Shown here: piece by piece, positions 1 through 32,196 of the stretch
How the letters are laid out: each line of letters opens with the position of its first letter
Position numbering within the stretch: the stretch's first letter is position 1
Origin: Blastocladiella emersonii ATCC 22665
Taxonomy: Eukaryota > Fungi > Blastocladiomycota
Direction: 5' to 3'
DNA length: 32,196 nt
Assembly (NCBI GenBank): GCA_025594325.1
Contig: JANHCV010000020.1
Coordinates: 1-32,196 of the forward strand
Translations under genes and position numbers: made by a program
The notes under the pieces: model-generated
Databases searched by the model: none
The model's input: the letters and a program-made list of their open reading frames with translations, nothing else
What the model was told of the DNA's origin: nothing

Positions 1-84
<84 letters not shown>
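1..84 (+). repeat. (CTG)28 microsatellite = polyQ-coding CAG tract of the C2 gene on the minus strand, cut by the window edge
   Basis: 28 perfect CTG units at 1-84, then TTG CTG TGG. On the minus strand it is in frame with ...HYQQQPQQ. Confidence 0.95.
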
Positions 85-88
<4 letters not shown>

Positions 89-918
89 TGTGGCTGCTGC
101 TGGTAGTGCGAAGGCGGGCGGTCGGGCAGCGCCGGTGGCGCGACATTTCCGCCATTTGGAACGTGGCCATGGCTCGGCGGCATGCTGGCCGACTGCGAGG
201 AGTGGGCATACCCGTAGTGTGCAGCAGTGGTGGTAGCGGTCGCCGAGGTGTGCGACGACGACGAGACCGACGCGACCGAGACGACCGAGTACCGGTGCGG
301 GTTCGAGTTGGCAAACGGGCCGCCGCCTGGCGCCACCAACTCGCCCTTTGGCGGTGGCAGCGGTGGCGGCGGAGCACCACCGCTGCCCGCGCTACCGCCT
401 GCCCCGAAACCGACACTGACACCGCCAATACCACCCGGCGAGACATGCTGCGCGGGGACGGCGCCCGTCAGGTGCGACACGACGGGGAACCCGCCCGACG
501 CGTCCGGCACCTCGGTGAGCACGCCCATCTCCGTGTGCACGCCTGCTGCCATCTGGCCAAACGACGGCGCGTTGCGGATCCCGAGGCGGCCCTCGAGCGT
601 CCCAATCACCTGGCCGGCGTGGTTCTGGATCGGCACGCGGAACTGGAACAGCGAGCCGCCGGTCGCGGGCAGGTCGCGCACGCGCAGCTGGCCGTGGCCG
701 ACGCGCGCGCCGAGCCGCTGCGAGTGGACCTCGATCTGGAGTGCGCCCTCGCGGTAGTCCTATTCGTGCGTTTGGTCGGGTCAGTGGGACTGAAAGTTGG
801 GAGAGGCCCAACACGAAGGCGCACAAACGTACGCGGTACGAGGTATTGAAGACGAGCAGCGGGGCCGTGTTCCAGCTCGCCGTCGGGCCGGCCTGCGTCG
901 CGGGCGGCGTGGTCACCT

Positions 919-954
<36 letters not shown>

Positions 955-1794
955 TGGAGGACGATCCACTGTCGCCGGCCGCCTCGTTGGCGGCGCCGCC
1001 ACTACCGGAACCAGCAGCCGTCGCAGGAGAGATTTCGAGGTACGGCTCGTGGATGTGGTTGCCCGCGACGCGCAGCAGGAGGGCCTCGAACGTGCACGTA
1101 ATGTCGTTCCACAGGTCCATGTCGAGGTCGAACAGGATCTTGCCTGCTGGATGCTTGGCGTGCTACGTGTGCGCGGACGGGTGCTCGTGAGTAGGGCGGC
1201 CAGTGCGGGCGGGTAACGGGTGGTGACGCACGTCGCGCAGCGGCAGCTCGTGCTTGATGGGCCCGCGGGCCAGCGTGAGCAGGTCTGGACGCCGAACTTG
1301 GGGTGTCAGCCGAGTTTAGGGGACGGCAGCAGCAATGGGACCGCACCGACTTCGCACGCCCCGATAAACTCGTCGCGGCGCCACCGGTCGTGGTCGTACA
1401 CCTCGATGCGGAACCGCTTGTCGCGGAGGTGCTCGACGTAGCGCTACTGGGTTTTGGCGGGCGCGGTGGGTCGGATCAGCCGCGGGTCCCCGTACGCCCA
1501 GTAACAGGAGGAAGCCGTGCGCACCGTCTCGTAGAAAAAGGTCACGTCAAAGTCCCACGCCGGATTCAGGTCGCGCTTGACGACCTCGGACTTGCCCGTC
1601 TTGAAGTTGTCGAACGAGAAGCGGAACTGCGGGTCGCTGGTGCCGTTGCTGTCGCGCGCGGGCAGGTTGAGGGCGCGCACGCTGTGCAGGCGGACGCGGA
1701 AGCGGGCGTTGCTCCCCCCGCCGGCACTTGTAGAGGAAGAGCCGGACGACAGGCCGCTGGTGCCCGTGCCGGTGCCGCCAAACGCGGAGGCCAT
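1..1794 (-). CDS. C2-domain protein (probably two C2 domains) with polyAla, Pro/Gly-rich and polyQ regions; 3' end outside window; left-arm copy
   Basis: Mirror of 30406-32196. N-terminal C2 motif RVRLHSVRALNLPARDSNGTSDPQFRF...VVKRDLNPAWD...IEVYDHDRWRRDEFIG; four GT-AG introns keep the frame. Confidence 0.85.
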
Positions 1795-2074
1795 GGTCTG
1801 TCGGTCGGGGTGTTCAGGGTGCCGTCGTCGGGTGCGCAGCGGTTGCGGCTGCTTCCATGAGATTTCGTCTGCGGGTTGGTTGCCTCGGCGGGGTGCGGGT
1901 CGAGAGGAGGGGGAGCGGCCCGCTGAGGCCCGCCGGCGGCAGAGTCCGAAAGTAAAGTGGCGGCGGCGGCGTGACCGCGTCGCTCTTTCTCTTTCCTGCC
2001 TGAGCTCGTCGGCGATGCTCTCTCCCCGGCCGGCACACTGGCCTTGAATGAAGCACTGATTAACACTGAACGTG
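1795..2074. promoter_or_regulatory. Short divergent intergenic region, probably a shared promoter of the C2 gene and the isochorismatase (mirrored at 30126-30405)
   Basis: Two ATGs face away from each other 280 bp apart. No specific element was identified. Confidence 0.5.
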
Positions 2075-2909
2075 ATGCTGTCCCGCCTGCTGCCCAAGAA
2101 TACGGCCTTTTTCCTCTGGTGAGTGAGTGCCCCGCCACGCCGCGTAACTAGCGCCTAACCCCTCGCTCGCCGCGGACAATACATACCCTGAACACACCCA
2201 GCGACGTCCAGGAGCGCTTCCGCCCGCTCATCTTCCGTTTTGCGGACGTGGTCGCCACCTCGGACAAGATGGCGCAGGCCGCCAAGGCGCTCGGCGTGCC
2301 GCTCGTCGTCACCGAGCAGAACCCGGCGCGCCTCGGCCAGACGGTCGCCGAGATTGACGTGGCACACGCCGCCGTCAACGTGCCCAAGACGCGCTTCTCC
2401 ATGGTCGTGCCCGAGGTGGCCGACCTGCTCGCCGAGCGCGCTGTCGAGAACGTGGTCGTGTTTGGCATCGAGGTGCGTGCCTTCACGTTAGACTCTGCCG
2501 TTGCCTCAAATCGCTGACAACCCTGTCCTCTCCAACAACAACAGAGCCACGTCTGCGTCACACAGACCGTCCTCGACCTCCTCGAGCAGGACCCCAAGCG
2601 CGCCGTCTACGTGCTCGCCGACGGCGTGTCGTCCATGAACCCGGCCGAGATCCCGGTCGCGCTCAAGGTTCATCCTAGCTCGTTCCCACTCGTTGCATGG
2701 ACCTGAACTCACTCGGCCTGCCCCTCGCATCGTGTGTGTAGCGCCTCTCGGCCGCGGGCGTCGTCGTCACCTCGTCCGAGTCGGTCCTGTTTGCCCTGCT
2801 CAAGGACGCCAAGCACGCCCAGTTCAAGGACGTGAGCAACCTCGTCAAGGCCTTCCAGACCCGCGGCCAGGACAATGAGCTGTTCAAGTTTGTCGCCAGC
2901 AAGCTCTGA
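2075..2909 (+). CDS. Isochorismatase-family (ISOC/YcaC-like) hydrolase, 201 aa, 4 exons (2075-2118, 2202-2472, 2545-2667, 2742-2909); left-arm copy
   Basis: Spliced product [23 protein letters not shown]...[13 protein letters not shown]...KTRFSMV...[20 protein letters not shown]...VLADGVSS...[12 protein letters not shown] carries the family motifs (CDVQE, TEQ, K-x-x-FS, GIE-x-HVCV). Exon total 606 nt. Confidence 0.92.
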
Positions 2910-4029
2910 AGACTGTTGGTTCTCGCTCGCTCTCTTCAGGCTGCGAGGATCCGGGTTGCTGGAATGCCATGTATCACTATTTGCGTGTCTTCATGTGCAT
3001 CAGTGTGTTGAGCTTGAGCGTGGGTCGGCAGCACGAAGCGGACCTGCAATGCCTCGATTGTGATCGCGATCGCGACGAACAATCATGTGACTGACGGCGG
3101 TGCGAGACGCGTCGTGTCGCGGGCGGCCGAGTGCGAGACGCGACGCGCGTGAAGTCGCGCCGCTGGCCATCGCGCGCCGCCCCCGCCCCTGCCCATGTCG
3201 ATTCCCGAAATCGCGCCTGCCGCGGCACTCGCCCCGCGGCCATCGCCTCGGGCCAAGGCGCAGGCCGATCCCGCCGTTGCTCCCGTGGTTACCGCGTCCC
3301 CCACGGCGTGGCTCGCGCGGCCATCGCGAACCCGCTGCTCACGCCCTCGCGCAGGGCACAGCAGCTGGCACAGCAGCTGGCTCAGCCTGATGGCCTCTCC
3401 TCGATGCCTCGCACCCAGGCGCCGCGTTGCGCACCCGCCGCGGCAAATAGGGAGGGATCGCGCCGCGAAGCTGGATGGATGGATGCCCTGCGCTGCAGAT
3501 CGGGATAGCGCGCGTGTATGCGCCGCGGTGAGAGACGCGGACGGGTGCCGCTCGCCACACGCCAAGGTCGACCATGACCTTGACCGGGACCCGATGGCGA
3601 TGGTCGCGTGGTCGCGTCCATCCCTTGTTGTTGCTGTTTCTGTTGCTGTTGCTGGCCGCGCGATCGCGTATCCCTGCTGCCAGCCTGGCATGGCGGGCGG
3701 CGTCACGCACGCACACACTTGGTCTGCCCCCGTTGCGTGCGTCGCGTACACATTTTGGTGGAGATAACCTGAACTACTCCTGACCCCCGCGCACGCACTC
3801 GGTCCTCGTCCACCGGCCCGACCCAGTCACCACCTCCACCACGCAGCTCGTCGCGCTGAACCCTCGCTCAGGTGCTCTCGCGACCTCTACCCTCTTCCCA
3901 AACCTGTTGCCCCACAAGCGGCCCTCCGTCTCGCCGTCGGGCCCTCCTTCAGCATCTGCCTCGGCCGCCTCGCTCCCGCTCCCAAACTCGCTGCTGCTCC
4001 GGCACCAATCATCCGTTTCCGTGGCAGCC

Positions 4030-7000
4030 ATGTCGCCCCCGTGCCCCATCAACCAGCTCTCCGGCAACTCTGGCGGCGGCGGCGGCGGCGGCGCCGGTGA
4101 CATTCCGGGCCTCGCCCGCCTCGACTCGAACCACGGCAGCCGCCCATCGCGGTTGAACGGCGGCGGCGGCGCCAGCGACGGCCCGAGCAGCCCCGATCGC
4201 CGCAAGCTCATGATCCAGGACGACGGCACGGGCAACGGCACCAGCAACACGTACAACGCAGGCTACGGCCTCGGCGGCCTCGGCGGGCTCGACAACGGCG
4301 GCGGGGGCGGTGCCACGTCGCCGTTCCCCGCATCGTCACGCAACAGCCTCGGCGGCGCCGGCGGCGGGTTCGGCGCGGGCGACGCGCTGCTCAACCCGAT
4401 GCAGGCAGCCTCGCTCGGGTTCGACATGGACGGGCACTCGAGTGGCTCGTCTTCGTCATCGCCGTTCGGTCTCTCTGGTGGCAGCGGCGGCCATGGCGGT
4501 AACACGCACCACGGTGGCGGCCACGGCCACGGCGGCCAAGAACAGCAGCAGGACCAGCGGTACGCGGGCGAGACCGAGCAGCGCGACTCGATCAACTCGT
4601 GGCGCGACTCCATGGACACGAGCCTGCGGCGCATCTTCGAGAACCTTCGTGTCGGTGCGTTTTCCTCTTGCTCATGGACTTGTTGACGTGTCGCGGTGTG
4701 GCGCAGCGCGCGTCGCCGGCTGATATCCCACCGATCACGCGCGCTGCGCCACATTCCCCGTCCTCGGCTTACTGCTGCGTCGGACCATCAGTCTCACTGC
4801 CACGGACCGCACCACATGTAGATATTGACCGCATGGAGGTCAACATCCGCCAGGCCGAGAACGAGGTCTTCCGCAAGGTACGGTCCCCCACCTCTGACCC
4901 GACCGCGAGCCTGACCAAACTGAACTGACGACCGACGACGCACCCCACCACAACCCGAAAACAGGAAGAGGAGGCCTTCTTCATGCGGCAGGACGAAATC
5001 GAAATCAACCAGCTGCTCAAGCGGCAGGCCGACGAGCTGCAGCGCGCCGAGGACGTGTACCAGGCCATGCTCGAGGAGCGCAAGACGCGCAAGCACACCA
5101 AGAAGCTGCAGGCCACGATCCACAAGGAGGCCAAGGCGCGGCACTCGAAAATGTGCTACCAGGACGAGGCCAAGCACATGGCCATGCAGCTGCGCAACAC
5201 GCTGGCGCAGCACCGCAAGCGCTTCGAGTTCCTCATCATCCACATCGAGGCCAAGCACGAGCGCCAGCGCGGCCAGCTCGAGGAGTCGCAGGAGCGCAAG
5301 ATCCGCGAGCAGCGCGCCCTGCTCGAGATCGAGACGCGCGGCCTGCGCGACGAGGTGCGCGCCGAGGTGTTCAAGGACTTCGCGTACCGCATGAACCACC
5401 AGACGGCGCTCGACAAGCACGTTGCCGAGCAGCTGCACGACCTGCAGCAGCTCGAGCTCAAGCACCGCAAGGAGCGCTTCGACGCCGAGGCCAAGGCGCT
5501 CGAGGAGGTGGCCTTTCTGCGGGCGACGCACCACCGCATCGTCAACGAGCTCGAGACCAAGCAGCGGCTCGACTACGCGGCCGAAAAGGAGCGCATCGAC
5601 GAGGCGCGCGAGAAGATCAAGCTGATGCAGCTCGACAGCAAGCACGGCGCCGAGCTCAAGTCGCTGCGCGCGCTGCACAAGGTGCAGGTGACGCTCGCCG
5701 CGCGGTCGCAGCGGCTGCTGGCGTCGCTGCGCCTGAAGAAGTGGCGCGAGATCCTGGCCGCCGAGGACGACTACGAGATTGAGACGTCGGCGAGCATGAC
5801 TGCCGCCGTCAGCCTGTCGACGGTCGGGTCGCAGGCCGCGCTCAACACGGGTGGCGGCGGTATCGGGGGTGGTGGTGCCAACGACTCGGACAATATCAGC
5901 CGGTCCGGGTCGACGAGCTCCATGGGCAGTCTCGCGCACCACTCGGCGGTCCTCGGCGGCGACGAGAGCGGCGCCGCGTCATCCTCGTTTGCGCTCGGCG
6001 GCATGGGTGGTGGTGGCATGGGCGGCTCGAGTATCGGGGGTGGCGCCGGCGGAGACGATGCCGAGACAGCCACGGCCGCGTCCGAGCAGCGCGACGCCGA
6101 CTCGGCCGCCGCGCGCCAGTTTGCCGAGGACCAGGCGCGCGCGCAGGAGCAGCTCAACCGGCTCCTCGAGCACCTCAAGGTCATGGTCGGGCGGCAGGCC
6201 GACGAGCTCAAGCGCGTGCGGCGCGAGAACGTCGAGGAGATGCGGCGGCTCGAGCGCAGCATCAAGACGCGCATGGACGAGCTCGACCTGCAGCAGGACA
6301 CGGAGATGCGCAGCATGCGCAAGTCGCACGAGTCGGCCATCAACGACATTGTCACGATGCAGCAGCGCGAGTACCAGATGGACGCCAACATCCGCGTCAC
6401 GGAGCGCAAGATGCTGACGGAGCGGCGCACGCTCAACTCGATCCTCGACGCCGTGTACGACGCCATTGTCAACATCCGCCCCGACGGCACCATCACGCGC
6501 TTCAACCTCTCGGCCGAGAAGATCTTTGGGTACAAGGCCGACGAGGTGATTGGCAAGAACGTGCGCATCCTGACCCCCGAGGAGGTGTCGCGCCGCCACG
6601 ACGGGTACCTCTCAAAGTACCTGACGACGGGCGTCAAGTCTAAGGCGTGGAACGGCATCTCCAACTTTGGCCGCCGCAAGGACTCGACGCTGTTCCCGAT
6701 CGTGCTGTCGGTCTCGGAGGTCAAGGAGGAGGACTTCCACCTGTTCACGGGCGTGGTGCGCGACGTGACCGACAAGCAGCGCAGCGAGGAGGCGGCGCGC
6801 GCCGAGCAGGAGCGCAAGGAGTCGGAGATGAAGGCGCTCATCTCGCTGCTCGACGTGGAGCGCACGAAATCGCAGTCGCTCATCAAGGAGATTCTGCCCG
6901 AGACGATCGCGGCGCAGCTGATGCGCGGCGAGGCCGTGGTCCCGCGCACGTACCCGGACGCGACGGTGCTGTACACGGACCTGGTCGGGTTCACGGCCAT

Positions 7001-7778
7001 CTCGTCGGCGGCGCGCCCGCTCGACGTGGTCGACATGCTCAACGACCTGTACTCGTCGTTCGACGAGATCATCGAGCAGTACGACGTGTACAAAGTCGAG
7101 ACGATCGGCGACTCGTACATGGTCGCCTCGGGCGTGCCCCGCCCGAACGGCACCAAGCACCTGACCGAGATGGCCAAGCTCGCGATCCACCTGGTCAAGG
7201 CGATCGGGTCCATCAAGATCCGGCACCGGGCCGATGTGACGCTGCGCATGCGCATCGGCATCCACACGGGCCCCGTGGTGGCGGGCGTCGTTGGCCGCAA
7301 GATGCCGCGGTATTGCCTGTTCGGCGACACGGTCGCGATTGCGAGCAAGATGGAGTCGTCGGGCGTGCCCATGAAGATCCAGGTCTCGGAGACGACGCAC
7401 GACCGGCTCGACGCCCTCGGCGGGTTCAACTTTGAGGCCCGCGGCGAGATGAACATTCCGGTCCGTACTACCCTACCTCTCTCGAGTGGGCGTGGTTTCG
7501 TGAGAAGCTTTGGTGGCTGACACTCGCTCCTGGTTGGCGTCACATCGTAGGGCAAGGGCATGATGCGCACCTACTTCCTCAGCGGGTGCGACGGCTTCAA
7601 CCCGACGTTCGTGCCCAAGGAGGAGGGCGCCGGATCGCCCCTCTCGGCCCTAGCCGTCAACCCCAACGCGGGTTCAACCAAGCTTGACCCCTCGGTGCCC
7701 GCCAACCCAGCCGATACCATTTCCGCTTCTCATGCCACGCATTATCAGCGTGACGACGCACGGGGTCAAGCCCTTTGA
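4030..7778 (+). CDS. GC-A: soluble helical-domain + PAS + class III guanylate-cyclase protein, ~1134 aa, 4 exons (4030-4654, 4822-4877, 4965-7460, 7551-7778)
   Basis: Cyclase motifs VLYTDLVGFT, VYKVETIGDSYM, RIGIHTGPVVAGVVG, PRYCLFGDTV, then RGEMNIP|GKGMMRTYFL across the last intron. PAS at ~6433-6773. GTP-specifying E and C present. Exon total 3405 nt. The start is inferred from the first in-frame ATG and N-terminal similarity to GC-B. Confidence 0.92.
6870..7150 (+). repeat. 281-bp block identical to 10896-11176 (cyclase domain of GC-A vs GC-B)
   Basis: Read base by base from tcgcagtcgctcatc... to ...cgcccgaacgg; offset 4026; no mismatch found by eye. Confidence 0.9.
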
Positions 7779-8381: not shown

Positions 8382-11300
8382 ATGTCGTGCCCGTTCCGTC
8401 CCGCCGCGGCTGCCCCCGGGCCCCAGACTGGATCCGCCTACGACAGCGACGGCTATATTCCGGGCCTCGCTCCGATGCCGCGCCGCAACGTCGGCCCGCC
8501 CGTCATCGGCACCGACATGGACAACCAGCCCATGAACGCCCATCTTCCGGGTACTGCCCTTGCCTTCGCGCTCAAATCACCCATCCCGATCCTGCGAACT
8601 GACACTTGAACGCCGCTAGCACTCACGGCAGGCCTTGGCGACGCTCTGAACAGCAGCAACCCCTCCTCGCTCGTCGCGTCGGCTCCTCGTAAGTTTGGTG
8701 GGAGCGAGCTGGCCGCCAACTCGTCGAGCACGGCAGATGACTACCAGGGCCGCAACGGCTTCCTCGTCAACACCGATGACCAGCGCATGCAGGTGCAGCT
8801 CGACAACGACAACGACGACCCCGTCAACTCGTGGCGCGCCAACATGGACTCGTCCGTTCGCCGGATTTTCGAGAATCTTCGCTACGGTTCGTTGCTTATG
8901 ATCGGACGAGTTTTTTCCCCCCTCAGAGCTAACGCGCACCCGTGTCCTCGTCTACTAGACATTGACAAGATGGAGGTCAACATCCGCCAGGCCGAGAACG
9001 AGGTCTTCCGCAAGGTCCGTGTGCCCATGCAGCCGATCATTCGCCGAGTAGCCCACTAACGCGATCCGATGCGATTACCGTAGGAGGAGGAGGCTTTCTT
9101 CATTCGCCAGGATGAGATCGAGACCAACCAGCTGCTCAAGCGCCAGGCCGACGAGCTGCAGCGTGCCGAGGAGACTTATCTCACTATGCTCGAGGAGCGC
9201 AAGACGCGCAAGCACACCAAGAAGCTCCAGAAGCACATGCATAAGGAGGCCAAGGCCCGCGACGCCAAGATCATGCACCAGGACCACGCCAAGCACATGG
9301 TCTTCGAGGTCCGCAACACGCTGGCGCAGCACCGCAAGCGCTTCGAGTTCCTCATCATCCACATCGAGGGCAAGCAGGACCGCCAGCGCGTGCAGCTCGA
9401 GGAGTCGCAGGAGCGCAAGATGCGCGAGCAGCGCGCCCTACTCGACATTGAGACGCGCGGTCTTCCGGAGGACCTTCGCGCCGAGGTGTTCAAGGACTTC
9501 GCGTACCGCATGAACCACCAGTCGACTCTCGACAAGCACGTCGCCGAGCAGCTTCACGATATTCAGCAGCTCGAGCTCAAGCACCGCAAGGAGCGCTTCG
9601 ACGCCGAGGCCAAGGCGCTCGAGGAGGTGGCCTTCCTTCGTGCAGCCGATCAGCGGCGCGTGAACGAGGTCGACACTGTGCAGAAGGCCGAGCTGGCGAC
9701 CGAGAAGGAGCGCATCGAGGAGGCGCGCGAGAAGATCAAGCTGATGCAGCTCGCCGTCCATCACGCGGCCGAGGTCCGCAAGCTCAAGGCCCTGCACAAG
9801 ACACAGCTCGCCCTCTCGGCCCGGATGCAGCGCATGCAGGCCAGCCTGCGCCTCAAGAAGTGGCGCGAGCTGCTCCTCAGCGACGACGACGAGACCAACG
9901 AGTTTGCGAGCGCCTCTCTCTCGAACATGCAGGCGAGCGTCTCGACGGTCGGGTCCGGCGCCGGTATCGGCACCGGAGACGACATCAACAGCATGAGCCG
10001 CAGCGTCTCAAGCAGCTCGGTCGGTAGTAGCGTCTCGGTCGCCAACCACCTTCCCATCGGCGACTCGGGCGGCAGCACCGTCTCGGGCCCGTCCGCCGAC
10101 GACCAGTTTGAGCAGCGCGAGGCCGAGCAGGCGTTCTTCCGCGCCCTCGACGACGAGCAGATCAAGGCCCAAAACGACCTGAACAAGCTGCTCGAGGTTC
10201 TCGCCACCACGCAGACTCGACAGAAGGAGGCCCTCAAGAAGCTGCGCAAGGAGCAGAACGAGGCGCTGCACCAGACCGAGCGCGACATCAAGTCGCGCAT
10301 GGAGGAGCTCGATCTGCAGCAGGACACGGAGATGCGCAGTATGCGCAAGTCGCACGAGGCGACCATCATGGAGATCATGGCGACACAGCAGCGCGAGTAC
10401 CAGATGGACGCGAGTATCCGCCTGGCCGAGCGCAAGATGCTCAACGAGCGCCGCACGCTCAACTCGGTCCTCGACGCTGTCGCCGACGGCATCATCAACA
10501 TCCTGCCCGACGGCACCATCACGCGCTTCAACATGGCCGCGGAGCGCATCTTCGGGTACACGACGGCCGAGATTGTCGGCAAGAACGTGCGCATCCTGAC
10601 CCCCGACACGGTGAGCAAGCACCATGATGGCTACCTGCGCCGGTACCTCACGACGGGCGTCAAGAAGGTGATCGGCGTTGGAACTAGTTCTCTCGCACGA
10701 AACGCGTCCGGCGCCGAGTTCCCGATCCGCCTCAGCGTGTCCGAGGTCAAGGAGGAGGAGTTCCACCTGTTCACCGGGATCGTGCGCGACCTCACCGAGG
10801 AGCGCAAGCACGAGGCTGCAGTGCGCTCGGAGCTCGAGCGCAAGGAGTCGGAGATGAAGGCTCTAATTGACCTTCTCGACGTCGAGCGCACCAAGTCGCA
10901 GTCGCTCATCAAGGAGATTCTGCCCGAGACGATCGCGGCGCAGCTGATGCGCGGCGAGGCCGTGGTCCCGCGCACGTACCCGGACGCGACGGTGCTGTAC
11001 ACGGACCTGGTCGGGTTCACGGCCATCTCGTCGGCGGCGCGCCCGCTCGACGTGGTCGACATGCTCAACGACCTGTACTCGTCGTTCGACGAGATCATCG
11101 AGCAGTACGACGTGTACAAAGTCGAGACGATCGGCGACTCGTACATGGTCGCCTCGGGCGTGCCCCGCCCGAACGGGTCCAACCATCTCGTGGAGATCGC
11201 CAAGCTGGCCCTGCATCTCCTCAAGGCGATCGGGTCCATCAAGATCCGGCACCGGCCCGACGTGACGCTGCGCATGCGCATCGGCATCCACACGGGCCCC

Positions 11301-11702
11301 GTGGTGGCGGGCGTCGTCGGCCGCAAGATGCCGCGGTACTGCCTGTTCGGCGACACGGTCGCGATTGCGAGCAAGATGGAGTCGTCGGGCGTGCCCATGA
11401 AGATCCAGATCAGCGAGACCACGTACGACCGCCTCGAGGCCATGGGTGGCTACCACTTTGAGCCGCGTGGCGAGATGGGCATCCCCGGCAAGGGTATGAT
11501 CAAGACCTACTTCCTCACGTCGCTGGACAACTTCAACCCGACCTTCACCCCGCGTGACGACTCGGTCGCGTCGCCGCTCTCAGCGCTCGCCGTTGGCGGG
11601 ACCAAGGAGCACCGCGGTGGCGACATCTTTGTCGGGTCCAGCACCGTCCAGAGCAACCACCACGAGCACGCTGCCGCTCGCCCTCACGGAGCCCAAGGTT
11701 AG
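8382..11702 (+). CDS. GC-B: tandem paralog of GC-A (helical domain + PAS + guanylate cyclase), ~1036 aa, 4 exons (8382-8550, 8620-8886, 8959-9014, 9084-11702)
   Basis: Same domain order and motifs as GC-A and shares the 56-nt exon (DI-D-x-MEVNIRQAENEVFRK). All three introns have GT..AG with a branch-like site; exon total 3111 nt is open. Confidence 0.92.
10896..11176 (+). repeat. 281-bp block identical to 6870-7150 (and to its mirror 25050-25330)
   Basis: Same comparison. A second block, 11221-11408 vs 7195-7382, differs at only 4 positions. Confidence 0.9.
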
Positions 11703-11997: not shown

Positions 11998-12375
11998 TCA
12001 GGCCGACTTCACGGAGCCGGCGGTCGAAGGCTTGTTGAGCGCAGCCTCAACCATCCCCTTGAGCTTGGTCCCGAGGGCCGAGTCCAGCTTCTCCGTTGGC
12101 GTGGTGAGCAGGTACGCGTCGAGGCCGCCCTTCTTGTCGATAGTACGCAGCGCTGTGGACGACACCTTGATGCGGAAGTGCTGGTCGAGGACGCGCGAGA
12201 AGAGCGAGCGCTCGTGGACGTTGGGCTCCCACGTGCGCCGGGTCTTGTGCTCCGAGTGGCTCACCTTGTTACCGTACATGATGCGCTTACCAGCGAGAAG
12301 CCCGGTGTCGGCGCGCCCGGGCCGCGACCCGCCGCGGAGGAGCGCGCGCTGGACGGCATAGACCGAGAGGGACAT
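11998..12375 (-). CDS. MRPL24: Mitochondrial ribosomal protein bL28m (L28 family), 125 aa
   Basis: GLLAGKRIMYGNKVSHSEHKTRRTWEPNV...IKVSSTALRTIDKKGGLDAYLL is the L28 signature; Arg-rich presequence-like N-terminus. A probable 57-nt 5'UTR intron lies at 12382-12438 (gtgagt...actgac...ctag). Confidence 0.9.
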   Translation of the reverse strand: MSLSVYAVQRALLRGGSRPGRADTGLLAGKRIMYGNKVSHSEHKTRRTWEPNVHERSLFSRVLDQHFRIKVSSTALRTIDKKGGLDAYLLTTPTEKLDSALGTKLKGMVEAALNKPSTAGSVKSA

Positions 12376-12813
12376 GTTGCACTAGGATGCCCAGGGTGTC
12401 AGTCTCCCGGTTTTATCGACCGGGACGCGGATACTCACGTTGGAGATGGTTCACAGGCACGATCGTGTGTGGCGTTGGACAGCGAGCCGCGGAGCAAGTG
12501 TCAATGGGGAGCGTGGGGCGGATGGGCGTATCCCGACCGCGTTGCGTATGGTTACTCGAGGTCCCGGTGCGGTTAACGCTGCATAGGATACATAGATGGG
12601 GAGCGCGACGAGGCTTCGAGCGCTGATCTCGACCTTGCGGCCAGCGAAACAACGCATCGGCTGACCCCAGCTGACTCGGCCGCGCCGCTCCTCCGGCCGC
12701 GCCGCTGCTGAGGCAGAGCCTCTCGAGCGCCAACTGGAGGACCAGTCCCGCTGTCCGTGCCAGTTGAAAGCGTCCCTTCATGCATCTTAGAACATAAAGC
12801 ACTGAAAGAAAAC

Positions 12814-18639: not shown

Positions 18640-18718
18640 ACTGCGCACCACGGGGAGACTATTGCAACACTGCGAATACATGCACTTGAAAGTATCATAT
18701 TACAATGGGAGAGAGCAA

Positions 18719-24436: not shown

Positions 24437-27400
24437 TCACTGAGCTGGCTGCTGGAAGCGGTGGTCGAGCGGCTCCATGCCCGATGATGCAGAGCCATCG
24501 TGGTTCGCGCCGCCGAGCTTGGCCGGGCCTGCGTTGGGGTTGACGGCGAGGGCCGAGAGGGGCGATCCGGCGCCCTCCTCCTTGGGCACGAACGTCGGGT
24601 TGAAGCCGTCGCACCCGCTGAGGAAGTAGGTGCGCATCATGCCCTTGCCCTACGATGTGACGCCAACCAGGAGCGAGTGTCAGCCACCAAAGCTTCTCAC
24701 GAAACCACGCCCACTCGAGAGAGGTAGGGTAGTACGGACCGGAATGTTCATCTCGCCGCGGGCCTCAAAGTTGAACCCGCCGAGGGCGTCGAGCCGGTCG
24801 TGCGTCGTCTCCGAGACCTGGATCTTCATGGGCACGCCCGACGACTCCATCTTGCTCGCAATCGCGACCGTGTCGCCGAACAGGCAATACCGCGGCATCT
24901 TGCGGCCAACGACGCCCGCCACCACGGGGCCCGTGTGGATGCCGATGCGCATGCGCAGCGTCACATCGGCCCGGTGCCGGATCTTGATGGACCCGATCGC
25001 CTTGACCAGGTGGATCGCGAGCTTGGCCATCTCGGTCAGGTGCTTGGTGCCGTTCGGGCGGGGCACGCCCGAGGCGACCATGTACGAGTCGCCGATCGTC
25101 TCGACTTTGTACACGTCGTACTGCTCGATGATCTCGTCGAACGACGAGTACAGGTCGTTGAGCATGTCGACCACGTCGAGCGGGCGCGCCGCCGACGAGA
25201 TGGCCGTGAACCCGACCAGGTCCGTGTACAGCACCGTCGCGTCCGGGTACGTGCGCGGGACCACGGCCTCGCCGCGCATCAGCTGCGCCGCGATCGTCTC
25301 GGGCAGAATCTCCTTGATGAGCGACTGCGATTTCGTGCGCTCCACGTCGAGCAGCGAGATGAGCGCCTTCATCTCCGACTCCTTGCGCTCCTGCTCGGCG
25401 CGCGCCGCCTCCTCGCTGCGCTGCTTGTCGGTCACGTCGCGCACCACGCCCGTGAACAGGTGGAAGTCCTCCTCCTTGACCTCCGAGACCGACAGCACGA
25501 TCGGGAACAGCGTCGAGTCCTTGCGGCGGCCAAAGTTGGAGATGCCGTTCCACGCCTTAGACTTGACGCCCGTCGTCAGGTACTTTGAGAGGTACCCGTC
25601 GTGGCGGCGCGACACCTCCTCGGGGGTCAGGATGCGCACGTTCTTGCCAATCACCTCGTCGGCCTTGTACCCAAAGATCTTCTCGGCCGAGAGGTTGAAG
25701 CGCGTGATGGTGCCGTCGGGGCGGATGTTGACAATGGCGTCGTACACGGCGTCGAGGATCGAGTTGAGCGTGCGCCGCTCCGTCAGCATCTTGCGCTCCG
25801 TGACGCGGATGTTGGCGTCCATCTGGTACTCGCGCTGCTGCATCGTGACAATGTCGTTGATGGCCGACTCGTGCGACTTGCGCATGCTGCGCATCTCCGT
25901 GTCCTGCTGCAGGTCGAGCTCGTCCATGCGCGTCTTGATGCTGCGCTCGAGCCGCCGCATCTCCTCGACGTTCTCGCGCCGCACGCGCTTGAGCTCGTCG
26001 GCCTGCCGCCCGACCATGACCTTGAGGTGCTCGAGGAGCCGGTTGAGCTGCTCCTGCGCGCGCGCCTGGTCCTCGGCAAACTGGCGCGCGGCGGCCGAGT
26101 CGGCGTCGCGCTGCTCGGACGCGGCCGTGGCTGTCTCGGCATCGTCTCCGCCGGCGCCACCCCCGATACTCGAGCCGCCCATGCCACCACCACCCATGCC
26201 GCCGAGCGCAAACGAGGATGACGCGGCGCCGCTCTCGTCGCCGCCGAGGACCGCCGAGTGGTGCGCGAGACTGCCCATGGAGCTCGTCGACCCGGACCGG
26301 CTGATATTGTCCGAGTCGTTGGCACCACCACCCCCGATACCGCCGCCACCCGTGTTGAGCGCGGCCTGCGACCCGACCGTCGACAGGCTGACGGCGGCAG
26401 TCATGCTCGCCGACGTCTCAATCTCGTAGTCGTCCTCGGCGGCCAGGATCTCGCGCCACTTCTTCAGGCGCAGCGACGCCAGCAGCCGCTGCGACCGCGC
26501 GGCGAGCGTCACCTGCACCTTGTGCAGCGCGCGCAGCGACTTGAGCTCGGCGCCGTGCTTGCTGTCGAGCTGCATCAGCTTGATCTTCTCGCGCGCCTCG
26601 TCGATGCGCTCCTTTTCGGCCGCGTAGTCGAGCCGCTGCTTGGTCTCGAGCTCGTTGACGATGCGGTGGTGCGTCGCCCGCAGAAAGGCCACCTCCTCGA
26701 GCGCCTTGGCCTCGGCGTCGAAGCGCTCCTTGCGGTGCTTGAGCTCGAGCTGCTGCAGGTCGTGCAGCTGCTCGGCAACGTGCTTGTCGAGCGCCGTCTG
26801 GTGGTTCATGCGGTACGCGAAGTCCTTGAACACCTCGGCGCGCACCTCGTCGCGCAGGCCGCGCGTCTCGATCTCGAGCAGGGCGCGCTGCTCGCGGATC
26901 TTGCGCTCCTGCGACTCCTCGAGCTGGCCGCGCTGGCGCTCGTGCTTGGCCTCGATGTGGATGATGAGGAACTCGAAGCGCTTGCGGTGCTGCGCCAGCG
27001 TGTTGCGCAGCTGCATGGCCATGTGCTTGGCCTCGTCCTGGTAGCACATTTTCGAGTGCCGCGCCTTGGCCTCCTTGTGGATCGTGGCCTGCAGCTTCTT
27101 GGTGTGCTTGCGCGTCTTGCGCTCCTCGAGCATGGCCTGGTACACGTCCTCGGCGCGCTGCAGCTCGTCGGCCTGCCGCTTGAGCAGCTGGTTGATTTCG
27201 ATTTCGTCCTGCCGCATGAAGAAGGCCTCCTCTTCCTGTTTTCGGGTTGTGGTGGGGTGCGTCGTCGGTCGTCAGTTCAGTTTGGTCAGGCTCGCGGTCG
27301 GGTCAGAGGTGGGGGACCGTACCTTGCGGAAGACCTCGTTCTCGGCCTGGCGGATGTTGACCTCCATGCGGTCAATATCTACATGTGGTGCGGTCCGTGG

Positions 27401-28170
27401 CAGTGAGACTGATGGTCCGACGCAGCAGTAAGCCGAGGACGGGGAATGTGGCGCAGCGCGCGTGATCGGTGGGATATCAGCCGGCGACGCGCGCTGCGCC
27501 ACACCGCGACACGTCAACAAGTCCATGAGCAAGAGGAAAACGCACCGACACGAAGGTTCTCGAAGATGCGCCGCAGGCTCGTGTCCATGGAGTCGCGCCA
27601 CGAGTTGATCGAGTCGCGCTGCTCGGTCTCGCCCGCGTACCGCTGGTCCTGCTGCTGTTCTTGGCCGCCGTGGCCGTGGCCGCCACCGTGGTGCGTGTTA
27701 CCGCCATGGCCGCCGCTGCCACCAGAGAGACCGAACGGCGATGACGAAGACGAGCCACTCGAGTGCCCGTCCATGTCGAACCCGAGCGAGGCTGCCTGCA
27801 TCGGGTTGAGCAGCGCGTCGCCCGCGCCGAACCCGCCGCCGGCGCCGCCGAGGCTGTTGCGTGACGATGCGGGGAACGGCGACGTGGCACCGCCCCCGCC
27901 GCCGTTGTCGAGCCCGCCGAGGCCGCCGAGGCCGTAGCCTGCGTTGTACGTGTTGCTGGTGCCGTTGCCCGTGCCGTCGTCCTGGATCATGAGCTTGCGG
28001 CGATCGGGGCTGCTCGGGCCGTCGCTGGCGCCGCCGCCGCCGTTCAACCGCGATGGGCGGCTGCCGTGGTTCGAGTCGAGGCGGGCGAGGCCCGGAATGT
28101 CACCGGCGCCGCCGCCGCCGCCGCCGCCAGAGTTGCCGGAGAGCTGGTTGATGGGGCACGGGGGCGACAT
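24437..28170 (-). CDS. GC-A': right-arm copy of the PAS-guanylate cyclase, ~1129 aa, with a different C-terminal tail
   Basis: Mirror of 4030-7651. The last exon (24649-24437) reads ...LSALAVNPNAGPAKLGGANHDGSASSGMEPLDHRFQQPAQ*. Confidence 0.92.
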
Positions 28171-29290
28171 GGCTGCCACGGAAACGGATGATTGGTGCCG
28201 GAGCAGCAGCGAGTTTGGGAGCGGGAGCGAGGCGGCCGAGGCAGATGCTGAAGGAGGGCCCGACGGCGAGACGGAGGGCCGCTTGTGGGGCAACAGGTTT
28301 GGGAAGAGGGTAGAGGTCGCGAGAGCACCTGAGCGAGGGTTCAGCGCGACGAGCTGCGTGGTGGAGGTGGTGACTGGGTCGGGCCGGTGGACGAGGACCG
28401 AGTGCGTGCGCGGGGGTCAGGAGTAGTTCAGGTTATCTCCACCAAAATGTGTACGCGACGCACGCAACGGGGGCAGACCAAGTGTGTGCGTGCGTGACGC
28501 CGCCCGCCATGCCAGGCTGGCAGCAGGGATACGCGATCGCGCGGCCAGCAACAGCAACAGAAACAGCAACAACAAGGGATGGACGCGACCACGCGACCAT
28601 CGCCATCGGGTCCCGGTCAAGGTCATGGTCGACCTTGGCGTGTGGCGAGCGGCACCCGTCCGCGTCTCTCACCGCGGCGCATACACGCGCGCTATCCCGA
28701 TCTGCAGCGCAGGGCATCCATCCATCCAGCTTCGCGGCGCGATCCCTCCCTATTTGCCGCGGCGGGTGCGCAACGCGGCGCCTGGGTGCGAGGCATCGAG
28801 GAGAGGCCATCAGGCTGAGCCAGCTGCTGTGCCAGCTGCTGTGCCCTGCGCGAGGGCGTGAGCAGCGGGTTCGCGATGGCCGCGCGAGCCACGCCGTGGG
28901 GGACGCGGTAACCACGGGAGCAACGGCGGGATCGGCCTGCGCCTTGGCCCGAGGCGATGGCCGCGGGGCGAGTGCCGCGGCAGGCGCGATTTCGGGAATC
29001 GACATGGGCAGGGGCGGGGGCGGCGCGCGATGGCCAGCGGCGCGACTTCACGCGCGTCGCGTCTCGCACTCGGCCGCCCGCGACACGACGCGTCTCGCAC
29101 CGCCGTCAGTCACATGATTGTTCGTCGCGATCGCGATCACAATCGAGGCATTGCAGGTCCGCTTCGTGCTGCCGACCCACGCTCAAGCTCAACACACTGA
29201 TGCACATGAAGACACGCAAATAGTGATACATGGCATTCCAGCAACCCGGATCCTCGCAGCCTGAAGAGAGCGAGCGAGAACCAACAGTCT

Positions 29291-30125
29291 TCAGAGCTTG
29301 CTGGCGACAAACTTGAACAGCTCATTGTCCTGGCCGCGGGTCTGGAAGGCCTTGACGAGGTTGCTCACGTCCTTGAACTGGGCGTGCTTGGCGTCCTTGA
29401 GCAGGGCAAACAGGACCGACTCGGACGAGGTGACGACGACGCCCGCGGCCGAGAGGCGCTACACACACGATGCGAGGGGCAGGCCGAGTGAGTTCAGGTC
29501 CATGCAACGAGTGGGAACGAGCTAGGATGAACCTTGAGCGCGACCGGGATCTCGGCCGGGTTCATGGACGACACGCCGTCGGCGAGCACGTAGACGGCGC
29601 GCTTGGGGTCCTGCTCGAGGAGGTCGAGGACGGTCTGTGTGACGCAGACGTGGCTCTGTTGTTGTTGGAGAGGACAGGGTTGTCAGCGATTTGAGGCAAC
29701 GGCAGAGTCTAACGTGAAGGCACGCACCTCGATGCCAAACACGACCACGTTCTCGACAGCGCGCTCGGCGAGCAGGTCGGCCACCTCGGGCACGACCATG
29801 GAGAAGCGCGTCTTGGGCACGTTGACGGCGGCGTGTGCCACGTCAATCTCGGCGACCGTCTGGCCGAGGCGCGCCGGGTTCTGCTCGGTGACGACGAGCG
29901 GCACGCCGAGCGCCTTGGCGGCCTGCGCCATCTTGTCCGAGGTGGCGACCACGTCCGCAAAACGGAAGATGAGCGGGCGGAAGCGCTCCTGGACGTCGCT
30001 GGGTGTGTTCAGGGTATGTATTGTCCGCGGCGAGCGAGGGGTTAGGCGCTAGTTACGCGGCGTGGCGGGGCACTCACTCACCAGAGGAAAAAGGCCGTAT
30101 TCTTGGGCAGCAGGCGGGACAGCAT
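29291..30125 (-). CDS. Isochorismatase-family hydrolase, right-arm copy
   Basis: Mirror of 2075-2909. Confidence 0.92.
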
Positions 30126-30405
30126 CACGTTCAGTGTTAATCAGTGCTTCATTCAAGGCCAGTGTGCCGGCCGGGGAGAGAGCATCGCCGACGAGCTCAG
30201 GCAGGAAAGAGAAAGAGCGACGCGGTCACGCCGCCGCCGCCACTTTACTTTCGGACTCTGCCGCCGGCGGGCCTCAGCGGGCCGCTCCCCCTCCTCTCGA
30301 CCCGCACCCCGCCGAGGCAACCAACCCGCAGACGAAATCTCATGGAAGCAGCCGCAACCGCTGCGCACCCGACGACGGCACCCTGAACACCCCGACCGAC
30401 AGACC

Positions 30406-31245
30406 ATGGCCTCCGCGTTTGGCGGCACCGGCACGGGCACCAGCGGCCTGTCGTCCGGCTCTTCCTCTACAAGTGCCGGCGGGGGGAGCAACGCCCGCTT
30501 CCGCGTCCGCCTGCACAGCGTGCGCGCCCTCAACCTGCCCGCGCGCGACAGCAACGGCACCAGCGACCCGCAGTTCCGCTTCTCGTTCGACAACTTCAAG
30601 ACGGGCAAGTCCGAGGTCGTCAAGCGCGACCTGAATCCGGCGTGGGACTTTGACGTGACCTTTTTCTACGAGACGGTGCGCACGGCTTCCTCCTGTTACT
30701 GGGCGTACGGGGACCCGCGGCTGATCCGACCCACCGCGCCCGCCAAAACCCAGTAGCGCTACGTCGAGCACCTCCGCGACAAGCGGTTCCGCATCGAGGT
30801 GTACGACCACGACCGGTGGCGCCGCGACGAGTTTATCGGGGCGTGCGAAGTCGGTGCGGTCCCATTGCTGCTGCCGTCCCCTAAACTCGGCTGACACCCC
30901 AAGTTCGGCGTCCAGACCTGCTCACGCTGGCCCGCGGGCCCATCAAGCACGAGCTGCCGCTGCGCGACGTGCGTCACCACCCGTTACCCGCCCGCACTGG
31001 CCGCCCTACTCACGAGCACCCGTCCGCGCACACGTAGCACGCCAAGCATCCAGCAGGCAAGATCCTGTTCGACCTCGACATGGACCTGTGGAACGACATT
31101 ACGTGCACGTTCGAGGCCCTCCTGCTGCGCGTCGCGGGCAACCACATCCACGAGCCGTACCTCGAAATCTCTCCTGCGACGGCTGCTGGTTCCGGTAGTG
31201 GCGGCGCCGCCAACGAGGCGGCCGGCGACAGTGGATCGTCCTCCA

Positions 31246-31281
<36 letters not shown>

Positions 31282-32111
31282 AGGTGACCACGCCGCCCGC
31301 GACGCAGGCCGGCCCGACGGCGAGCTGGAACACGGCCCCGCTGCTCGTCTTCAATACCTCGTACCGCGTACGTTTGTGCGCCTTCGTGTTGGGCCTCTCC
31401 CAACTTTCAGTCCCACTGACCCGACCAAACGCACGAATAGGACTACCGCGAGGGCGCACTCCAGATCGAGGTCCACTCGCAGCGGCTCGGCGCGCGCGTC
31501 GGCCACGGCCAGCTGCGCGTGCGCGACCTGCCCGCGACCGGCGGCTCGCTGTTCCAGTTCCGCGTGCCGATCCAGAACCACGCCGGCCAGGTGATTGGGA
31601 CGCTCGAGGGCCGCCTCGGGATCCGCAACGCGCCGTCGTTTGGCCAGATGGCAGCAGGCGTGCACACGGAGATGGGCGTGCTCACCGAGGTGCCGGACGC
31701 GTCGGGCGGGTTCCCCGTCGTGTCGCACCTGACGGGCGCCGTCCCCGCGCAGCATGTCTCGCCGGGTGGTATTGGCGGTGTCAGTGTCGGTTTCGGGGCA
31801 GGCGGTAGCGCGGGCAGCGGTGGTGCTCCGCCGCCACCGCTGCCACCGCCAAAGGGCGAGTTGGTGGCGCCAGGCGGCGGCCCGTTTGCCAACTCGAACC
31901 CGCACCGGTACTCGGTCGTCTCGGTCGCGTCGGTCTCGTCGTCGTCGCACACCTCGGCGACCGCTACCACCACTGCTGCACACTACGGGTATGCCCACTC
32001 CTCGCAGTCGGCCAGCATGCCGCCGAGCCATGGCCACGTTCCAAATGGCGGAAATGTCGCGCCACCGGCGCTGCCCGACCGCCCGCCTTCGCACTACCAG
32101 CAGCAGCCACA

Positions 32112-32196
<85 letters not shown>
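30406..32196 (+). CDS. C2-domain/polyQ protein, right-arm copy; exons 30406-30675, 30757-30853, 30916-30968, 31038-31367, 31441->32196 (3' partial)
   Basis: Spliced frame is open: MASAF...C2...YET|RYVEHLRDKRFRIEVYDHD...|DLLTLARGPIKHELPLRD|HAKHPAGKILFDLDM...SYR|DYREGALQIEV...HYQQQPQ(Q)n. Confidence 0.85.
32116..32196 (+). repeat. (CAG)27 microsatellite, polyQ-coding, cut by the window edge
   Basis: 27 perfect CAG units preceded by CAC TAC CAG CAG CAG CCA CAG CAA, in frame with the last visible exon of the C2 gene. Confidence 0.95.

What the first reader, a model, noticed from the sequence alone, without database searches (positions are those of the whole stretch)
7320..7360. All three cyclases lack the catalytic Asn/Arg (GDTVAIASKMES): alpha-subunit-like halves that need a partner
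Seen: the canonical GDTVNTASRMES is GDTVAIASKMES in GC-A (Ala 7335-7337, Lys 7347-7349), GC-B (11361-11375) and GC-A' (24851-24865). Both metal-binding Asp (YTDLVG, IGDSY) and the GTP-specifying Glu/Cys are intact. Known: class III cyclase active sites form at a dimer interface, with one half giving the two Asp and the other the Asn/Arg. Animal sGC alpha has exactly this pattern (GNNVTLANKFES), and obligate heterodimeric rhodopsin-cyclases are known from the chytrid Rhizoclosmatium. Inference: these are alpha-type subunits, inactive or weak as homodimers, with a beta-type partner encoded elsewhere. That would be a convergent heterodimeric sGC-like system.
Basis: partly seen in the sequence, partly recalled or inferred. 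Interest (0 to 1): 0.78.

Follow-up and report, generated by a model that had tools for sequence, protein, structure and literature searches.

The report
Alpha-type half of fungal guanylyl cyclase
Two neighbouring genes of the water fungus Blastocladiella emersonii (one present as an exact inverted duplicate) encode cGMP-making enzymes that lack two catalytic residues. The same genome has three sister genes that lack the complementary residues, so the enzyme most likely works only as a mixed pair, like the animal nitric-oxide receptor but evolved separately.

Summary
FGDTVAIASKMES stands at 7320-7358 (GC-A), 11346-11384 (GC-B) and 24842-24880 (GC-A'), in place of the canonical FGDTVNTASRMES. 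GC-A' is not a third case. It lies in an inverted repeat that is identical from 4 to 7651, so there are only two distinct genes.

The window is the whole 32,196-bp contig 20 of Blastocladiella emersonii ATCC 22665. The proteins have a long coiled coil, a FixL-type PAS domain and a class III guanylyl cyclase domain.

I tabulated the eight catalytic positions in 22 blastoclad relatives.
- 13 "alpha-type" proteins, including GC-A and GC-B, keep both metal Asp and the phosphate Arg but lack the ribose Asn. Most also have Lys for the second Arg.
- 9 "beta-type" proteins from six genera keep Glu, Cys, Asn, Arg and Lys. All have first Asp->Glu and phosphate Arg->Lys. Three are in this genome: BeGC3 (H9P43_009044), H9P43_005231 and H9P43_002510.
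- These are the same positions that differ between animal sGC alpha and beta.

A tree puts one alpha/beta duplication at the base of Blastocladiomycota, inside a clade of canonical fungal PAS cyclases, so the origin is independent of animals.

Heterodimer formation and activity were not tested. The scan reached the same reading on other DNA of this genome. No paper describing it was found.

The parts
4030..7778 (+). GC-A gene, an alpha-type PAS guanylyl cyclase. The main ORF is 4983-7460, followed by an intron at 7461-7550 and a last exon at 7551-7778. There are further 5' exons from ~4030.
   Evidence: ORF and translation. The GT..AG intron restores the GKGMMRTYFL motif. The 5' extent is taken by symmetry from the annotated model of the identical copy, H9P43_010198.
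6435..6773 (+). GC-A FixL-type PAS domain. The proximal His is kept and the distal Arg is lost.
   Evidence: Pfam PAS_9/PAS. PDB FixL match at E 1.6e-25, with RHDGYL aligned to the heme-His motif. Family table.
6942..7590 (+). GC-A class III cyclase catalytic domain, interrupted by the intron at 7461-7550.
   Evidence: Pfam PF00211 at 1.6e-60. ~57% identical to the ANP-receptor cyclase.
7320..7358 (+). FGDTVAIASKMES motif: Ala 7335-7337 in place of the ribose Asn, and Lys 7347-7349 in place of the phosphate Arg.
6978..7112 (+). The retained half-site residues of GC-A: metal Asp 6978-6980, base Glu 7098-7100 and metal Asp 7110-7112. The phosphate Arg lies further on, at 7251-7253.
   Evidence: Read. 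Column table.
9186..11702 (+). GC-B main ORF, an alpha-type paralog. Homologous 5' exons lie upstream (~8740-9185). The cyclase domain is 10968-11519 and the motif is 11346-11384.
24437..28170 (-). GC-A' (annotated H9P43_010198, protein P0002). It is an exact inverted copy of GC-A except for the last ~30 codons. The motif is at 24842-24880.
4..7651 (.). Left arm of the terminal inverted repeat, identical to 24549-32196. The repeat boundary falls inside the last exon of GC-A.
24549..32196 (.). Right arm of the terminal inverted repeat.

Best explanation
GC-A (with its exact copy GC-A') and GC-B are alpha-type subunits of a heterodimeric, soluble, PAS-linked guanylyl cyclase.

A class III cyclase builds each active site across the dimer interface. 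One chain gives the two metal-binding Asp and a phosphate-binding Arg. The other chain gives the base-reading Glu and Cys, the ribose Asn, and the Arg and Lys that hold the phosphates and the transition state.

GC-A and GC-B keep the first set and have lost the Asn (and the Arg, now Lys) of the second set. Three sister proteins in the same genome show the mirror pattern: BeGC3 (H9P43_009044), H9P43_005231 and H9P43_002510. They keep Glu, Cys, Asn, Arg and Lys, but have Glu for the first metal Asp and Lys for the phosphate Arg.

An alpha/beta pair would therefore have one complete catalytic site, with the metal half from alpha and the substrate/transition-state half from beta. It would also have one degenerate pseudo-symmetric site in which all the changes are concentrated, as in animal sGC and in the C1/C2 adenylyl cyclases.

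Shown here: the residue patterns, their conservation, the age and fungal origin of the duplication, and the colinear architecture with an identical PAS-to-cyclase linker length.

Inferred: that alpha and beta actually pair, that alpha homodimers are poor enzymes, and that the FixL-type PAS of alpha (His kept) is the heme/gas input while the Blastocladiella beta PAS (His deleted) is sensor-less.
For: - The motif and intact half-site are in the sequence.
- Family table of the eight catalytic positions defined in Table 1 of PMC6005667. In 13 of 13 blastoclad alpha-type proteins the metal Asp, Glu and metal Asp are kept and the Asn is lost; the phosphate Arg is kept in 12 of 13 and falls at an alignment gap in P0030. 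The Cys, second Arg and Lys positions vary. In 9 of 9 beta-type proteins from six genera the first Asp is Glu, the phosphate Arg is Lys, and the other five positions are invariant.
- The animal sGC alpha and beta domains in P0077 differ at the same positions.
- By my own arithmetic, the chance that the four changed alpha positions fall within the five-position set and the two changed beta positions within the three-position set, in either labelling, is about 0.015.
- Among 64 rows, Asn loss (22 rows) and first-Asp loss (9 rows) overlap in only one metagenomic protein.
- Careful tree: blastoclad clade 99/99, beta clade 100/99, alpha clade 92/86. Each mirrors the species order, and both types are retained in Blastocladiella emersonii, B. 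britannica, Catenaria, Allomyces arbusculus, Coelomomyces and Sorochytrium.
- GC-A and BeGC3 are colinear over 895 residues at 38% identity. The distance from the PAS DxT motif to the first metal position is 73 residues wherever the DxT motif was matched (9 of 13 alpha-type, not the four Catenaria, and all six beta-type tested), which is compatible with one parallel coiled coil.
- Independent replicate in Polychytrium: P0035 (first Asp->Asn, phosphate Arg->Gln) sits in one gene cluster with P0031, which lacks the Asn.
- Experimental precedent: the Rv1625c D300A and R376A mutants are each inactive and complement each other (PMC4821796).
Against: - No experiment or read data were available.
- Arg->Lys in alpha, and Asp->Glu and Arg->Lys in beta, are conservative changes. 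Residual homodimer activity of either type cannot be excluded.
- The Coelomomyces pair of alpha-type proteins keeps the Arg.
- Alpha and beta genes are on different contigs in B. emersonii, so there is no linkage evidence in this genome.
- Support for alpha monophyly is only 92/86.
- dN/dS between GC-A and GC-B is uninformative for the cyclase domain because dS is low, probably through gene conversion.
Confidence: 0.7

Rival explanations
1. GC-A and GC-B are self-sufficient homodimeric cyclases with lowered or differently regulated activity. Lys partly replaces the Arg, and the missing Asn only reduces turnover.
For: All other catalytic residues are intact and the domain is ~57% identical to an active receptor cyclase. 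Arg->Lys is conservative. The isolated cyclase domain of a chytrid heterodimer subunit (RgRGC1) is active alone (PMC10622942), which shows that 'heterodimeric' subunits need not be dead.
Against: The Asn position drifts freely in the alpha clade (A/S/T/L, and M/V in chytrid analogues), as expected for a position with no role. The residues that alpha would donate in trans are strictly kept. This reading does not explain the mirror-image, invariant changes in the co-retained beta clade.
Confidence: 0.14
2. The alpha-type subunits pair with a fully canonical cyclase (the rhodopsin cyclase BeGC1, or BeGC2) rather than with the beta-type PAS cyclases.
For: BeGC1 has all eight residues (Table 1 of PMC6005667). 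In Rozella and Terramyces/Boothiomyces, Asn-lacking PAS cyclases coexist with canonical PAS cyclases and no beta-like form was seen.
Against: BeGC1 is a membrane protein with a different N-terminal part and linker. Beta-type proteins share the whole architecture and exact linker length with alpha, and their own degeneration only makes sense with an alpha-type partner.
Confidence: 0.08
3. The genes are catalytically dead: pseudo-enzymes acting as scaffolds or dominant-negative regulators, or decaying duplicates on an artefactual contig.
For: Two key residues are missing. The contig is small, with perfect 7.6-kb terminal inverted repeats that could be an assembly fold-back. Expression was not checked.
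Against: The reading frames are intact, with conserved multi-exon 5' regions in both genes. The proteins are 60-65% identical to orthologs in other blastoclad genera over the PAS and cyclase region. The metal Asp, Glu and phosphate Arg are conserved across the alpha clade. Close paralogs lie on megabase contigs: H9P43_008877 is 93% identical to GC-A.
Confidence: 0.08

Closest known systems
Animal NO-sensitive soluble guanylyl cyclase (sGC alpha1/beta1)
   Same: It is a soluble, heterodimeric class III guanylyl cyclase with one catalytic and one pseudo-symmetric site. The alpha subunit keeps the metal Asp, metal Asp and phosphate Arg and has Thr/Lys for Asn/Arg. The beta subunit keeps Glu, Cys, Asn, Arg and Lys and has lost the first Asp and the phosphate Arg. 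These are the same positions as here. A coiled-coil signalling helix precedes the cyclase domain.
   Different: - The sensor here is a FixL-type PAS domain, not H-NOX. The Pfam HNOBA match covers only the helix and is below threshold (17 bits against a cutoff of 23.4).
- The heme-His-bearing subunit here is alpha, whereas in animals it is beta.
- The beta changes here are conservative (Glu, Lys).
- There is a long N-terminal coiled coil.
- The alpha/beta split arose within fungi.
Heterodimeric rhodopsin guanylyl cyclases of Chytridiales (NeoR + RGC(a))
   Same: Zoosporic-fungal guanylyl cyclases that became obligate heterodimers after a gene duplication. In the Polychytrium PAS-cyclase analogue the genes are also clustered (PMC10622942).
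   Different: They are membrane rhodopsin sensors and are restricted to Chytridiales. The isolated RGC(a) cyclase domain is active alone, so their dependence is not explained by clean complementary loss of catalytic residues. They are absent from Blastocladiomycota, whose rhodopsin cyclase is homodimeric.
Mammalian membrane adenylyl cyclase C1/C2 and the complementing Rv1625c mutants
   Same: The two half-sites are divided between two diverged domains. The metal-Asp mutant and the transition-state-Arg mutant of Rv1625c are each inactive but active together (PMC4821796).
   Different: C1 and C2 are fused in one chain and make cAMP. Rv1625c complementation is an engineered case, whereas the present one is natural and on separate genes.
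Bacterial FixL heme-PAS oxygen sensor
   Same: The PAS domain matches FixL structures at E 1e-25, with the proximal His motif aligned.
   Different: The output is a cyclase, not a histidine kinase. The distal Arg that contacts O2 in FixL is absent from all four B. emersonii alpha-type proteins. Heme binding was not tested.

Membership tests
Class III nucleotidyl cyclase (Pfam PF00211), guanylyl type | Catalytic-domain fold and sequence profile | tested here: met
   PF00211 at E 1.6e-60 (GC-A) and 8e-65 (GC-B). PDB ANP-receptor cyclase at E 8e-72.
Class III nucleotidyl cyclase (Pfam PF00211), guanylyl type | Glu/Cys pair that specifies GTP | tested here: met
   Glu 7098-7100 and Cys 7314-7316 in GC-A, and the same residues in GC-B.
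Class III nucleotidyl cyclase (Pfam PF00211), guanylyl type | Full set of eight catalytic residues in one chain (homodimer-competent) | tested here: not met
   Asn->Ala and Arg->Lys.
sGC-alpha-like half-site subunit (functional class) | Keeps both metal Asp and the phosphate Arg; lacks the ribose Asn and the transition-state Arg | tested here: met
   Pattern D E D R C A K K, against D E D R C T K for the animal alpha domain in P0077.
sGC-alpha-like half-site subunit (functional class) | A complementary beta-type subunit is encoded in the same genome | tested here: met
   H9P43_009044, H9P43_005231 and H9P43_002510 have the pattern E E D K C N R K.
sGC-alpha-like half-site subunit (functional class) | Physical heterodimer; activity only in the pair | not testable with these tools
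   No multimer modelling or assay was available.
Animal sGC family (by descent) | H-NOX / HNOBA sensor region and common origin of the alpha/beta split | tested here: not met
   There is no H-NOX domain. The HNOBA match is 17 bits, below the 23.4 cutoff, and covers only the helix. Alpha and beta are sister clades inside the fungal PAS cyclases.
FixL-type heme PAS | Proximal heme His in the F-alpha helix | tested here: met
   RHDGYL aligns with FixL EHDGYL and RHDSYI.
FixL-type heme PAS | Distal Arg that binds O2 | tested here: not met
   Ile or Thr stands at that column in GC-A and GC-B. The Arg is retained in most chytrid relatives.
FixL-type heme PAS | Heme actually bound | not testable with these tools
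   This needs spectroscopy of expressed protein.

The most novel reading that the evidence does not exclude
Blastocladiomycota run a combinatorial gas- or redox-sensing cGMP system built from obligate alpha/beta PAS-cyclase heterodimers (4 distinct alpha x 3 beta in B. emersonii).

The heme-His-bearing FixL-type PAS sits on the subunit that donates the metal-binding half. In Blastocladiella and Catenaria the beta subunit has lost its heme His. This wiring is the inverse of animal sGC.

This enzyme, rather than an H-NOX protein, would be the receptor behind the reported Ca2+-NO-cGMP control of zoospore formation.

The same half-site split has arisen repeatedly in zoosporic fungi (Polychytrium, Rozella, the Terramyces/Boothiomyces group). 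That would make the family a natural series for studying how homodimeric enzymes ratchet into obligate heterodimers.
Probability: 0.35. Interest if true: 0.8.

Novelty: new variant of a known kind. Interest (0 to 1): 0.62.

Why it matters
Complementary half-site heterodimers are a textbook feature of animal sGC and membrane adenylyl cyclases. An independent, natural origin inside fungi, with a different sensor domain, would show that this architecture is a recurrent evolutionary outcome.

It also gives B. emersonii, an optogenetics and phototaxis model, a concrete molecular candidate for its NO/cGMP pathway. The genome paper attributed that pathway to BeGC3 alone, on the basis of a weak HNOBA hit (PMC9730499).

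In practice, anyone expressing these cyclases singly, for example as tools, should expect little activity. The pairs listed here say which proteins to co-express.

Tried and rejected
- The supplements of the genome paper are not held, so its cyclase group table could not be compared.
- dN/dS between GC-A and GC-B was meant as a test of purifying selection. dS in the cyclase domain is only 0.19 (0.4-1.4 elsewhere), which points to gene conversion, so the ratio (0.39) is weak evidence. I relied on cross-genus conservation instead.
- I asked whether the contig is a haplotype of the H9P43_008877 locus, whose protein is 93% identical to GC-A. I rejected this because the flanking genes differ.
- I asked whether alpha and beta genes are linked in B. 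emersonii. They are not: all lie on different contigs.
- Literature searches for PAS or FixL guanylyl cyclases of chytrids or blastoclads, and for heterodimers of them, found nothing.
- No structure was predicted. Only single chains can be folded, which cannot test pairing, and the gap-free 57%-identity alignment to solved cyclases already places the residues.
- Rows left out of the careful tree by my motif filter: P0004, P0006, P0041, P0121, P0035 and P0036. Except for P0121, which was fetched only later, these rows are in the quick tree, where P0041 falls in the beta clade.

Full report
**What is there**

The window is the complete 32,196-bp contig JANHCV010000020.1 of Blastocladiella emersonii ATCC 22665. 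This is a GC-rich zoosporic fungus (65% GC).

Positions 4-7651 are the exact reverse complement of 24549-32196. The 'third cyclase', GC-A', is therefore the same sequence as GC-A. It is annotated as H9P43_010198 (protein P0002). The two proteins differ only in the last ~30 residues, because the repeat boundary lies inside the last exon.

GC-A has its main ORF at 4983-7460, a 90-nt intron at 7461-7550 and a last exon to 7778, with further exons from ~4030. GC-B has its main ORF at 9186-11702. Homologous upstream exons are visible in the translations. The two are tandem paralogs.

Both proteins consist of a long coiled-coil region, a PAS domain and a class III cyclase domain.

**The observation**

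FGDTVAIASKMES is present at the stated coordinates in all three places. In the gap-free alignment to the human ANP-receptor cyclase (E 8e-72, ~57% identity), Ala and Lys stand where that enzyme has the Asn and Arg of FGDTVNTASRMES.

The other six canonical catalytic residues are intact in GC-A and GC-B. They are the two metal Asp, the Glu, the phosphate Arg, the Cys and the distal Lys, as listed in Table 1 of PMC6005667. Those two genes have near-identical catalytic domains, with a low dS that suggests gene conversion.

**Is the change conserved, and is there a partner?**

A database search with the PAS+cyclase part of GC-B returned PAS cyclases from Blastocladiomycota, Chytridiomycota and Rozella. 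A second search with BeGC3 added more. I aligned the cyclase domains and read the eight catalytic columns.

| Position (PMC6005667 Table 1) | Alpha-type, 13 blastoclad proteins | Beta-type, 9 blastoclad proteins |
|---|---|---|
| 1, metal Asp | Asp | Glu |
| 2, base Glu | Glu | Glu |
| 3, metal Asp | Asp | Asp |
| 4, phosphate Arg | Arg (alignment gap in P0030) | Lys |
| 5, base Cys | Cys or Thr | Cys |
| 6, ribose Asn | Ala, Ser, Thr or Leu | Asn |
| 7, phosphate Arg | Lys (Arg in the Coelomomyces pair) | Arg |
| 8, phosphate Lys | Lys, Arg or His | Lys |

- The alpha-type set holds GC-A, GC-B, H9P43_008877, H9P43_002938, four Catenaria proteins, two Allomyces proteins, one Coelomomyces protein, one unnamed assembly protein and one Sorochytrium protein.
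- The beta-type set holds BeGC3 (H9P43_009044), H9P43_005231 and H9P43_002510. It also holds one protein each from B. britannica, Catenaria, Allomyces arbusculus, Coelomomyces, Sorochytrium and an unnamed assembly.
- The beta pattern is invariant across all nine proteins.
- The animal sGC alpha and beta domains, both present in P0077, differ at exactly the same positions: alpha has T and K at positions 6 and 7, and beta has G and T at positions 1 and 4.
- In a heterodimer, all of these changes fall in one of the two pseudo-symmetric sites and leave the other complete.
- Across 64 rows, loss of the Asn (22 rows) and loss of the first Asp (9 rows) overlap in only one metagenomic protein.

**Evolution**

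A careful maximum-likelihood tree was built from 26 rows. Six rows dropped by my motif filter are named under Tried and rejected.
- The blastoclad proteins form one clade (support 99/99) among canonical chytrid PAS cyclases.
- That clade splits into a beta clade (100/99) and an alpha clade (92/86).
- Each sub-clade repeats the order Sorochytrium, then Coelomomyces, then Catenaria plus Blastocladiella.

There was therefore one duplication at the base of the phylum. Both copies have been retained in every blastoclad genus sampled. The split is independent of the animal alpha/beta split.

A second, independent case is visible in Polychytrium. P0035 has first Asp->Asn and phosphate Arg->Gln. It is sister to three Asn-lacking paralogs. 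It lies in a gene cluster with one of them, together with a photolyase-family gene and a cNMP-binding protein gene. Asn-lacking forms also arose in Rozella and in the Terramyces/Boothiomyces group, where only canonical potential partners were seen.

**Compatibility of the two subunit types**

GC-A' (P0002) and BeGC3 align colinearly over 895 residues at 38% identity, including the N-terminal coiled coil. The spacing from the PAS C-terminal DxT motif to the first metal position is 73 residues in every blastoclad alpha-type and beta-type protein where the DxT motif was matched (not in the four Catenaria alpha-types), and in nearly all canonical relatives. A common parallel signalling helix is therefore geometrically possible.

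**Mechanistic precedent**

In the homodimeric cyclase Rv1625c, a metal-Asp mutant and a transition-state-Arg mutant are each inactive, and they complement each other in a mixed dimer (PMC4821796, citing Guo et al. 2001). The assignment of residues to the two sGC subunits is from PMC6005667.

**Sensor domain**

The PAS domain matches FixL heme-PAS structures at E 1.6e-25, with the proximal His motif aligned. Several differences stand out.
- The four B. emersonii alpha-type proteins keep the His but lack the FixL distal Arg, which most chytrid relatives retain.
- The beta-type proteins of Blastocladiella and Catenaria have lost the His: in B. emersonii and Catenaria through a short deletion, while B. 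britannica has Glu at that column.
- The beta-type proteins of Allomyces, Coelomomyces and Sorochytrium keep the His.

If heme is bound, the sensing subunit in B. emersonii is the metal-donating alpha. That is the reverse of animal sGC.

**Literature and earlier notes**

The genome paper lists 17 cyclase genes, 11 of them predicted to be guanylyl cyclases. It inspected only the YKVET and MPRYCL motifs, calls BeGC3 an HNOBA protein, and mentions neither PAS domains nor heterodimers (PMC9730499). Searches for PAS or FixL guanylyl cyclases in zoosporic fungi found nothing.

Heterodimeric rhodopsin cyclases are known in Chytridiales (PMC10622942). They belong to another sensor class, and one of their subunits has an active isolated cyclase domain.

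Earlier notes of this scan, on this window and on two other pieces of the genome, reached the same 'half of a two-part enzyme' reading. I treated these as leads and re-derived the residue tables myself.

**Limits**

Nothing here shows that alpha and beta bind each other, or that homodimers are inactive. The beta changes are conservative. The perfect terminal inverted repeat on the smallest nuclear contig of a HiFi assembly may be an assembly artefact. That would affect only the copy number, not the finding.

**Verdict**

It is a new variant of a known kind: a complementary half-site cyclase heterodimer that arose independently in fungi and carries a FixL-type PAS sensor.

Noticed in passing
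window 4-7651 and 24549-32196: The whole contig ends in perfectly identical inverted repeats of 7.65 kb. The boundary lies inside the last exon of GC-A, which gives two alternative C-terminal tails. This is either a very recent inverted duplication or a fold-back artefact on the smallest nuclear contig of a PacBio HiFi assembly.
   Followed up: partly
window 6435-6773 and 10620-10740: The FixL-type PAS domains of GC-A and GC-B keep the proximal heme His but have lost the distal Arg that contacts O2 in FixL. The loop carrying it differs strongly between the two paralogs.
   Followed up: partly
P0042, P0049, P0053, P0060, P0121 (beta-type proteins, other contigs and species): Beta-type subunits of Blastocladiella and Catenaria have lost the heme His of the PAS domain (a short deletion in B. 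emersonii and Catenaria; Glu at that column in B. britannica). Beta-types of Allomyces, Coelomomyces and Sorochytrium keep it.
   Followed up: partly
window 6785-7460 versus 10811-11485: The cyclase domains of GC-A and GC-B are 91-94% identical in DNA, with dS 0.19 against 0.4-1.4 in the rest of the genes. This suggests gene conversion confined to the catalytic domain.
   Followed up: partly
L001:1-18738 (Polychytrium aggregatum JAHLKK010000010.1): One cluster holds three PAS guanylyl cyclase genes (one beta-like, at least one alpha-like), a photolyase/cryptochrome-family gene and a 785-residue cNMP-binding protein gene. It may be a co-regulated cGMP signalling locus.
   Followed up: no
P0078, P0082, P0085-P0087, P0090, P0093, P0102 (oomycete proteins): Oomycete two-domain cyclases show the same half-site split within one chain. 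The first domain lacks the metal Asp but keeps Asn/Arg/Lys. The second keeps both Asp but lacks Asn/Arg.
   Followed up: no
window 12000-24400: The unique middle of the contig carries ordinary eukaryotic genes: diphthamide synthesis, GDA1/CD39 nucleoside phosphatase, a septin and a PAP2_C phosphatase. None is a cyclase partner.
   Followed up: partly
P0124 and P0129: FixL-type PAS cyclases also occur outside fungi, for example in the green alga Tetraselmis. There they have Lys/Asp at the base-specifying positions, so they are predicted adenylyl rather than guanylyl cyclases, and they have all the other catalytic residues.
   Followed up: no
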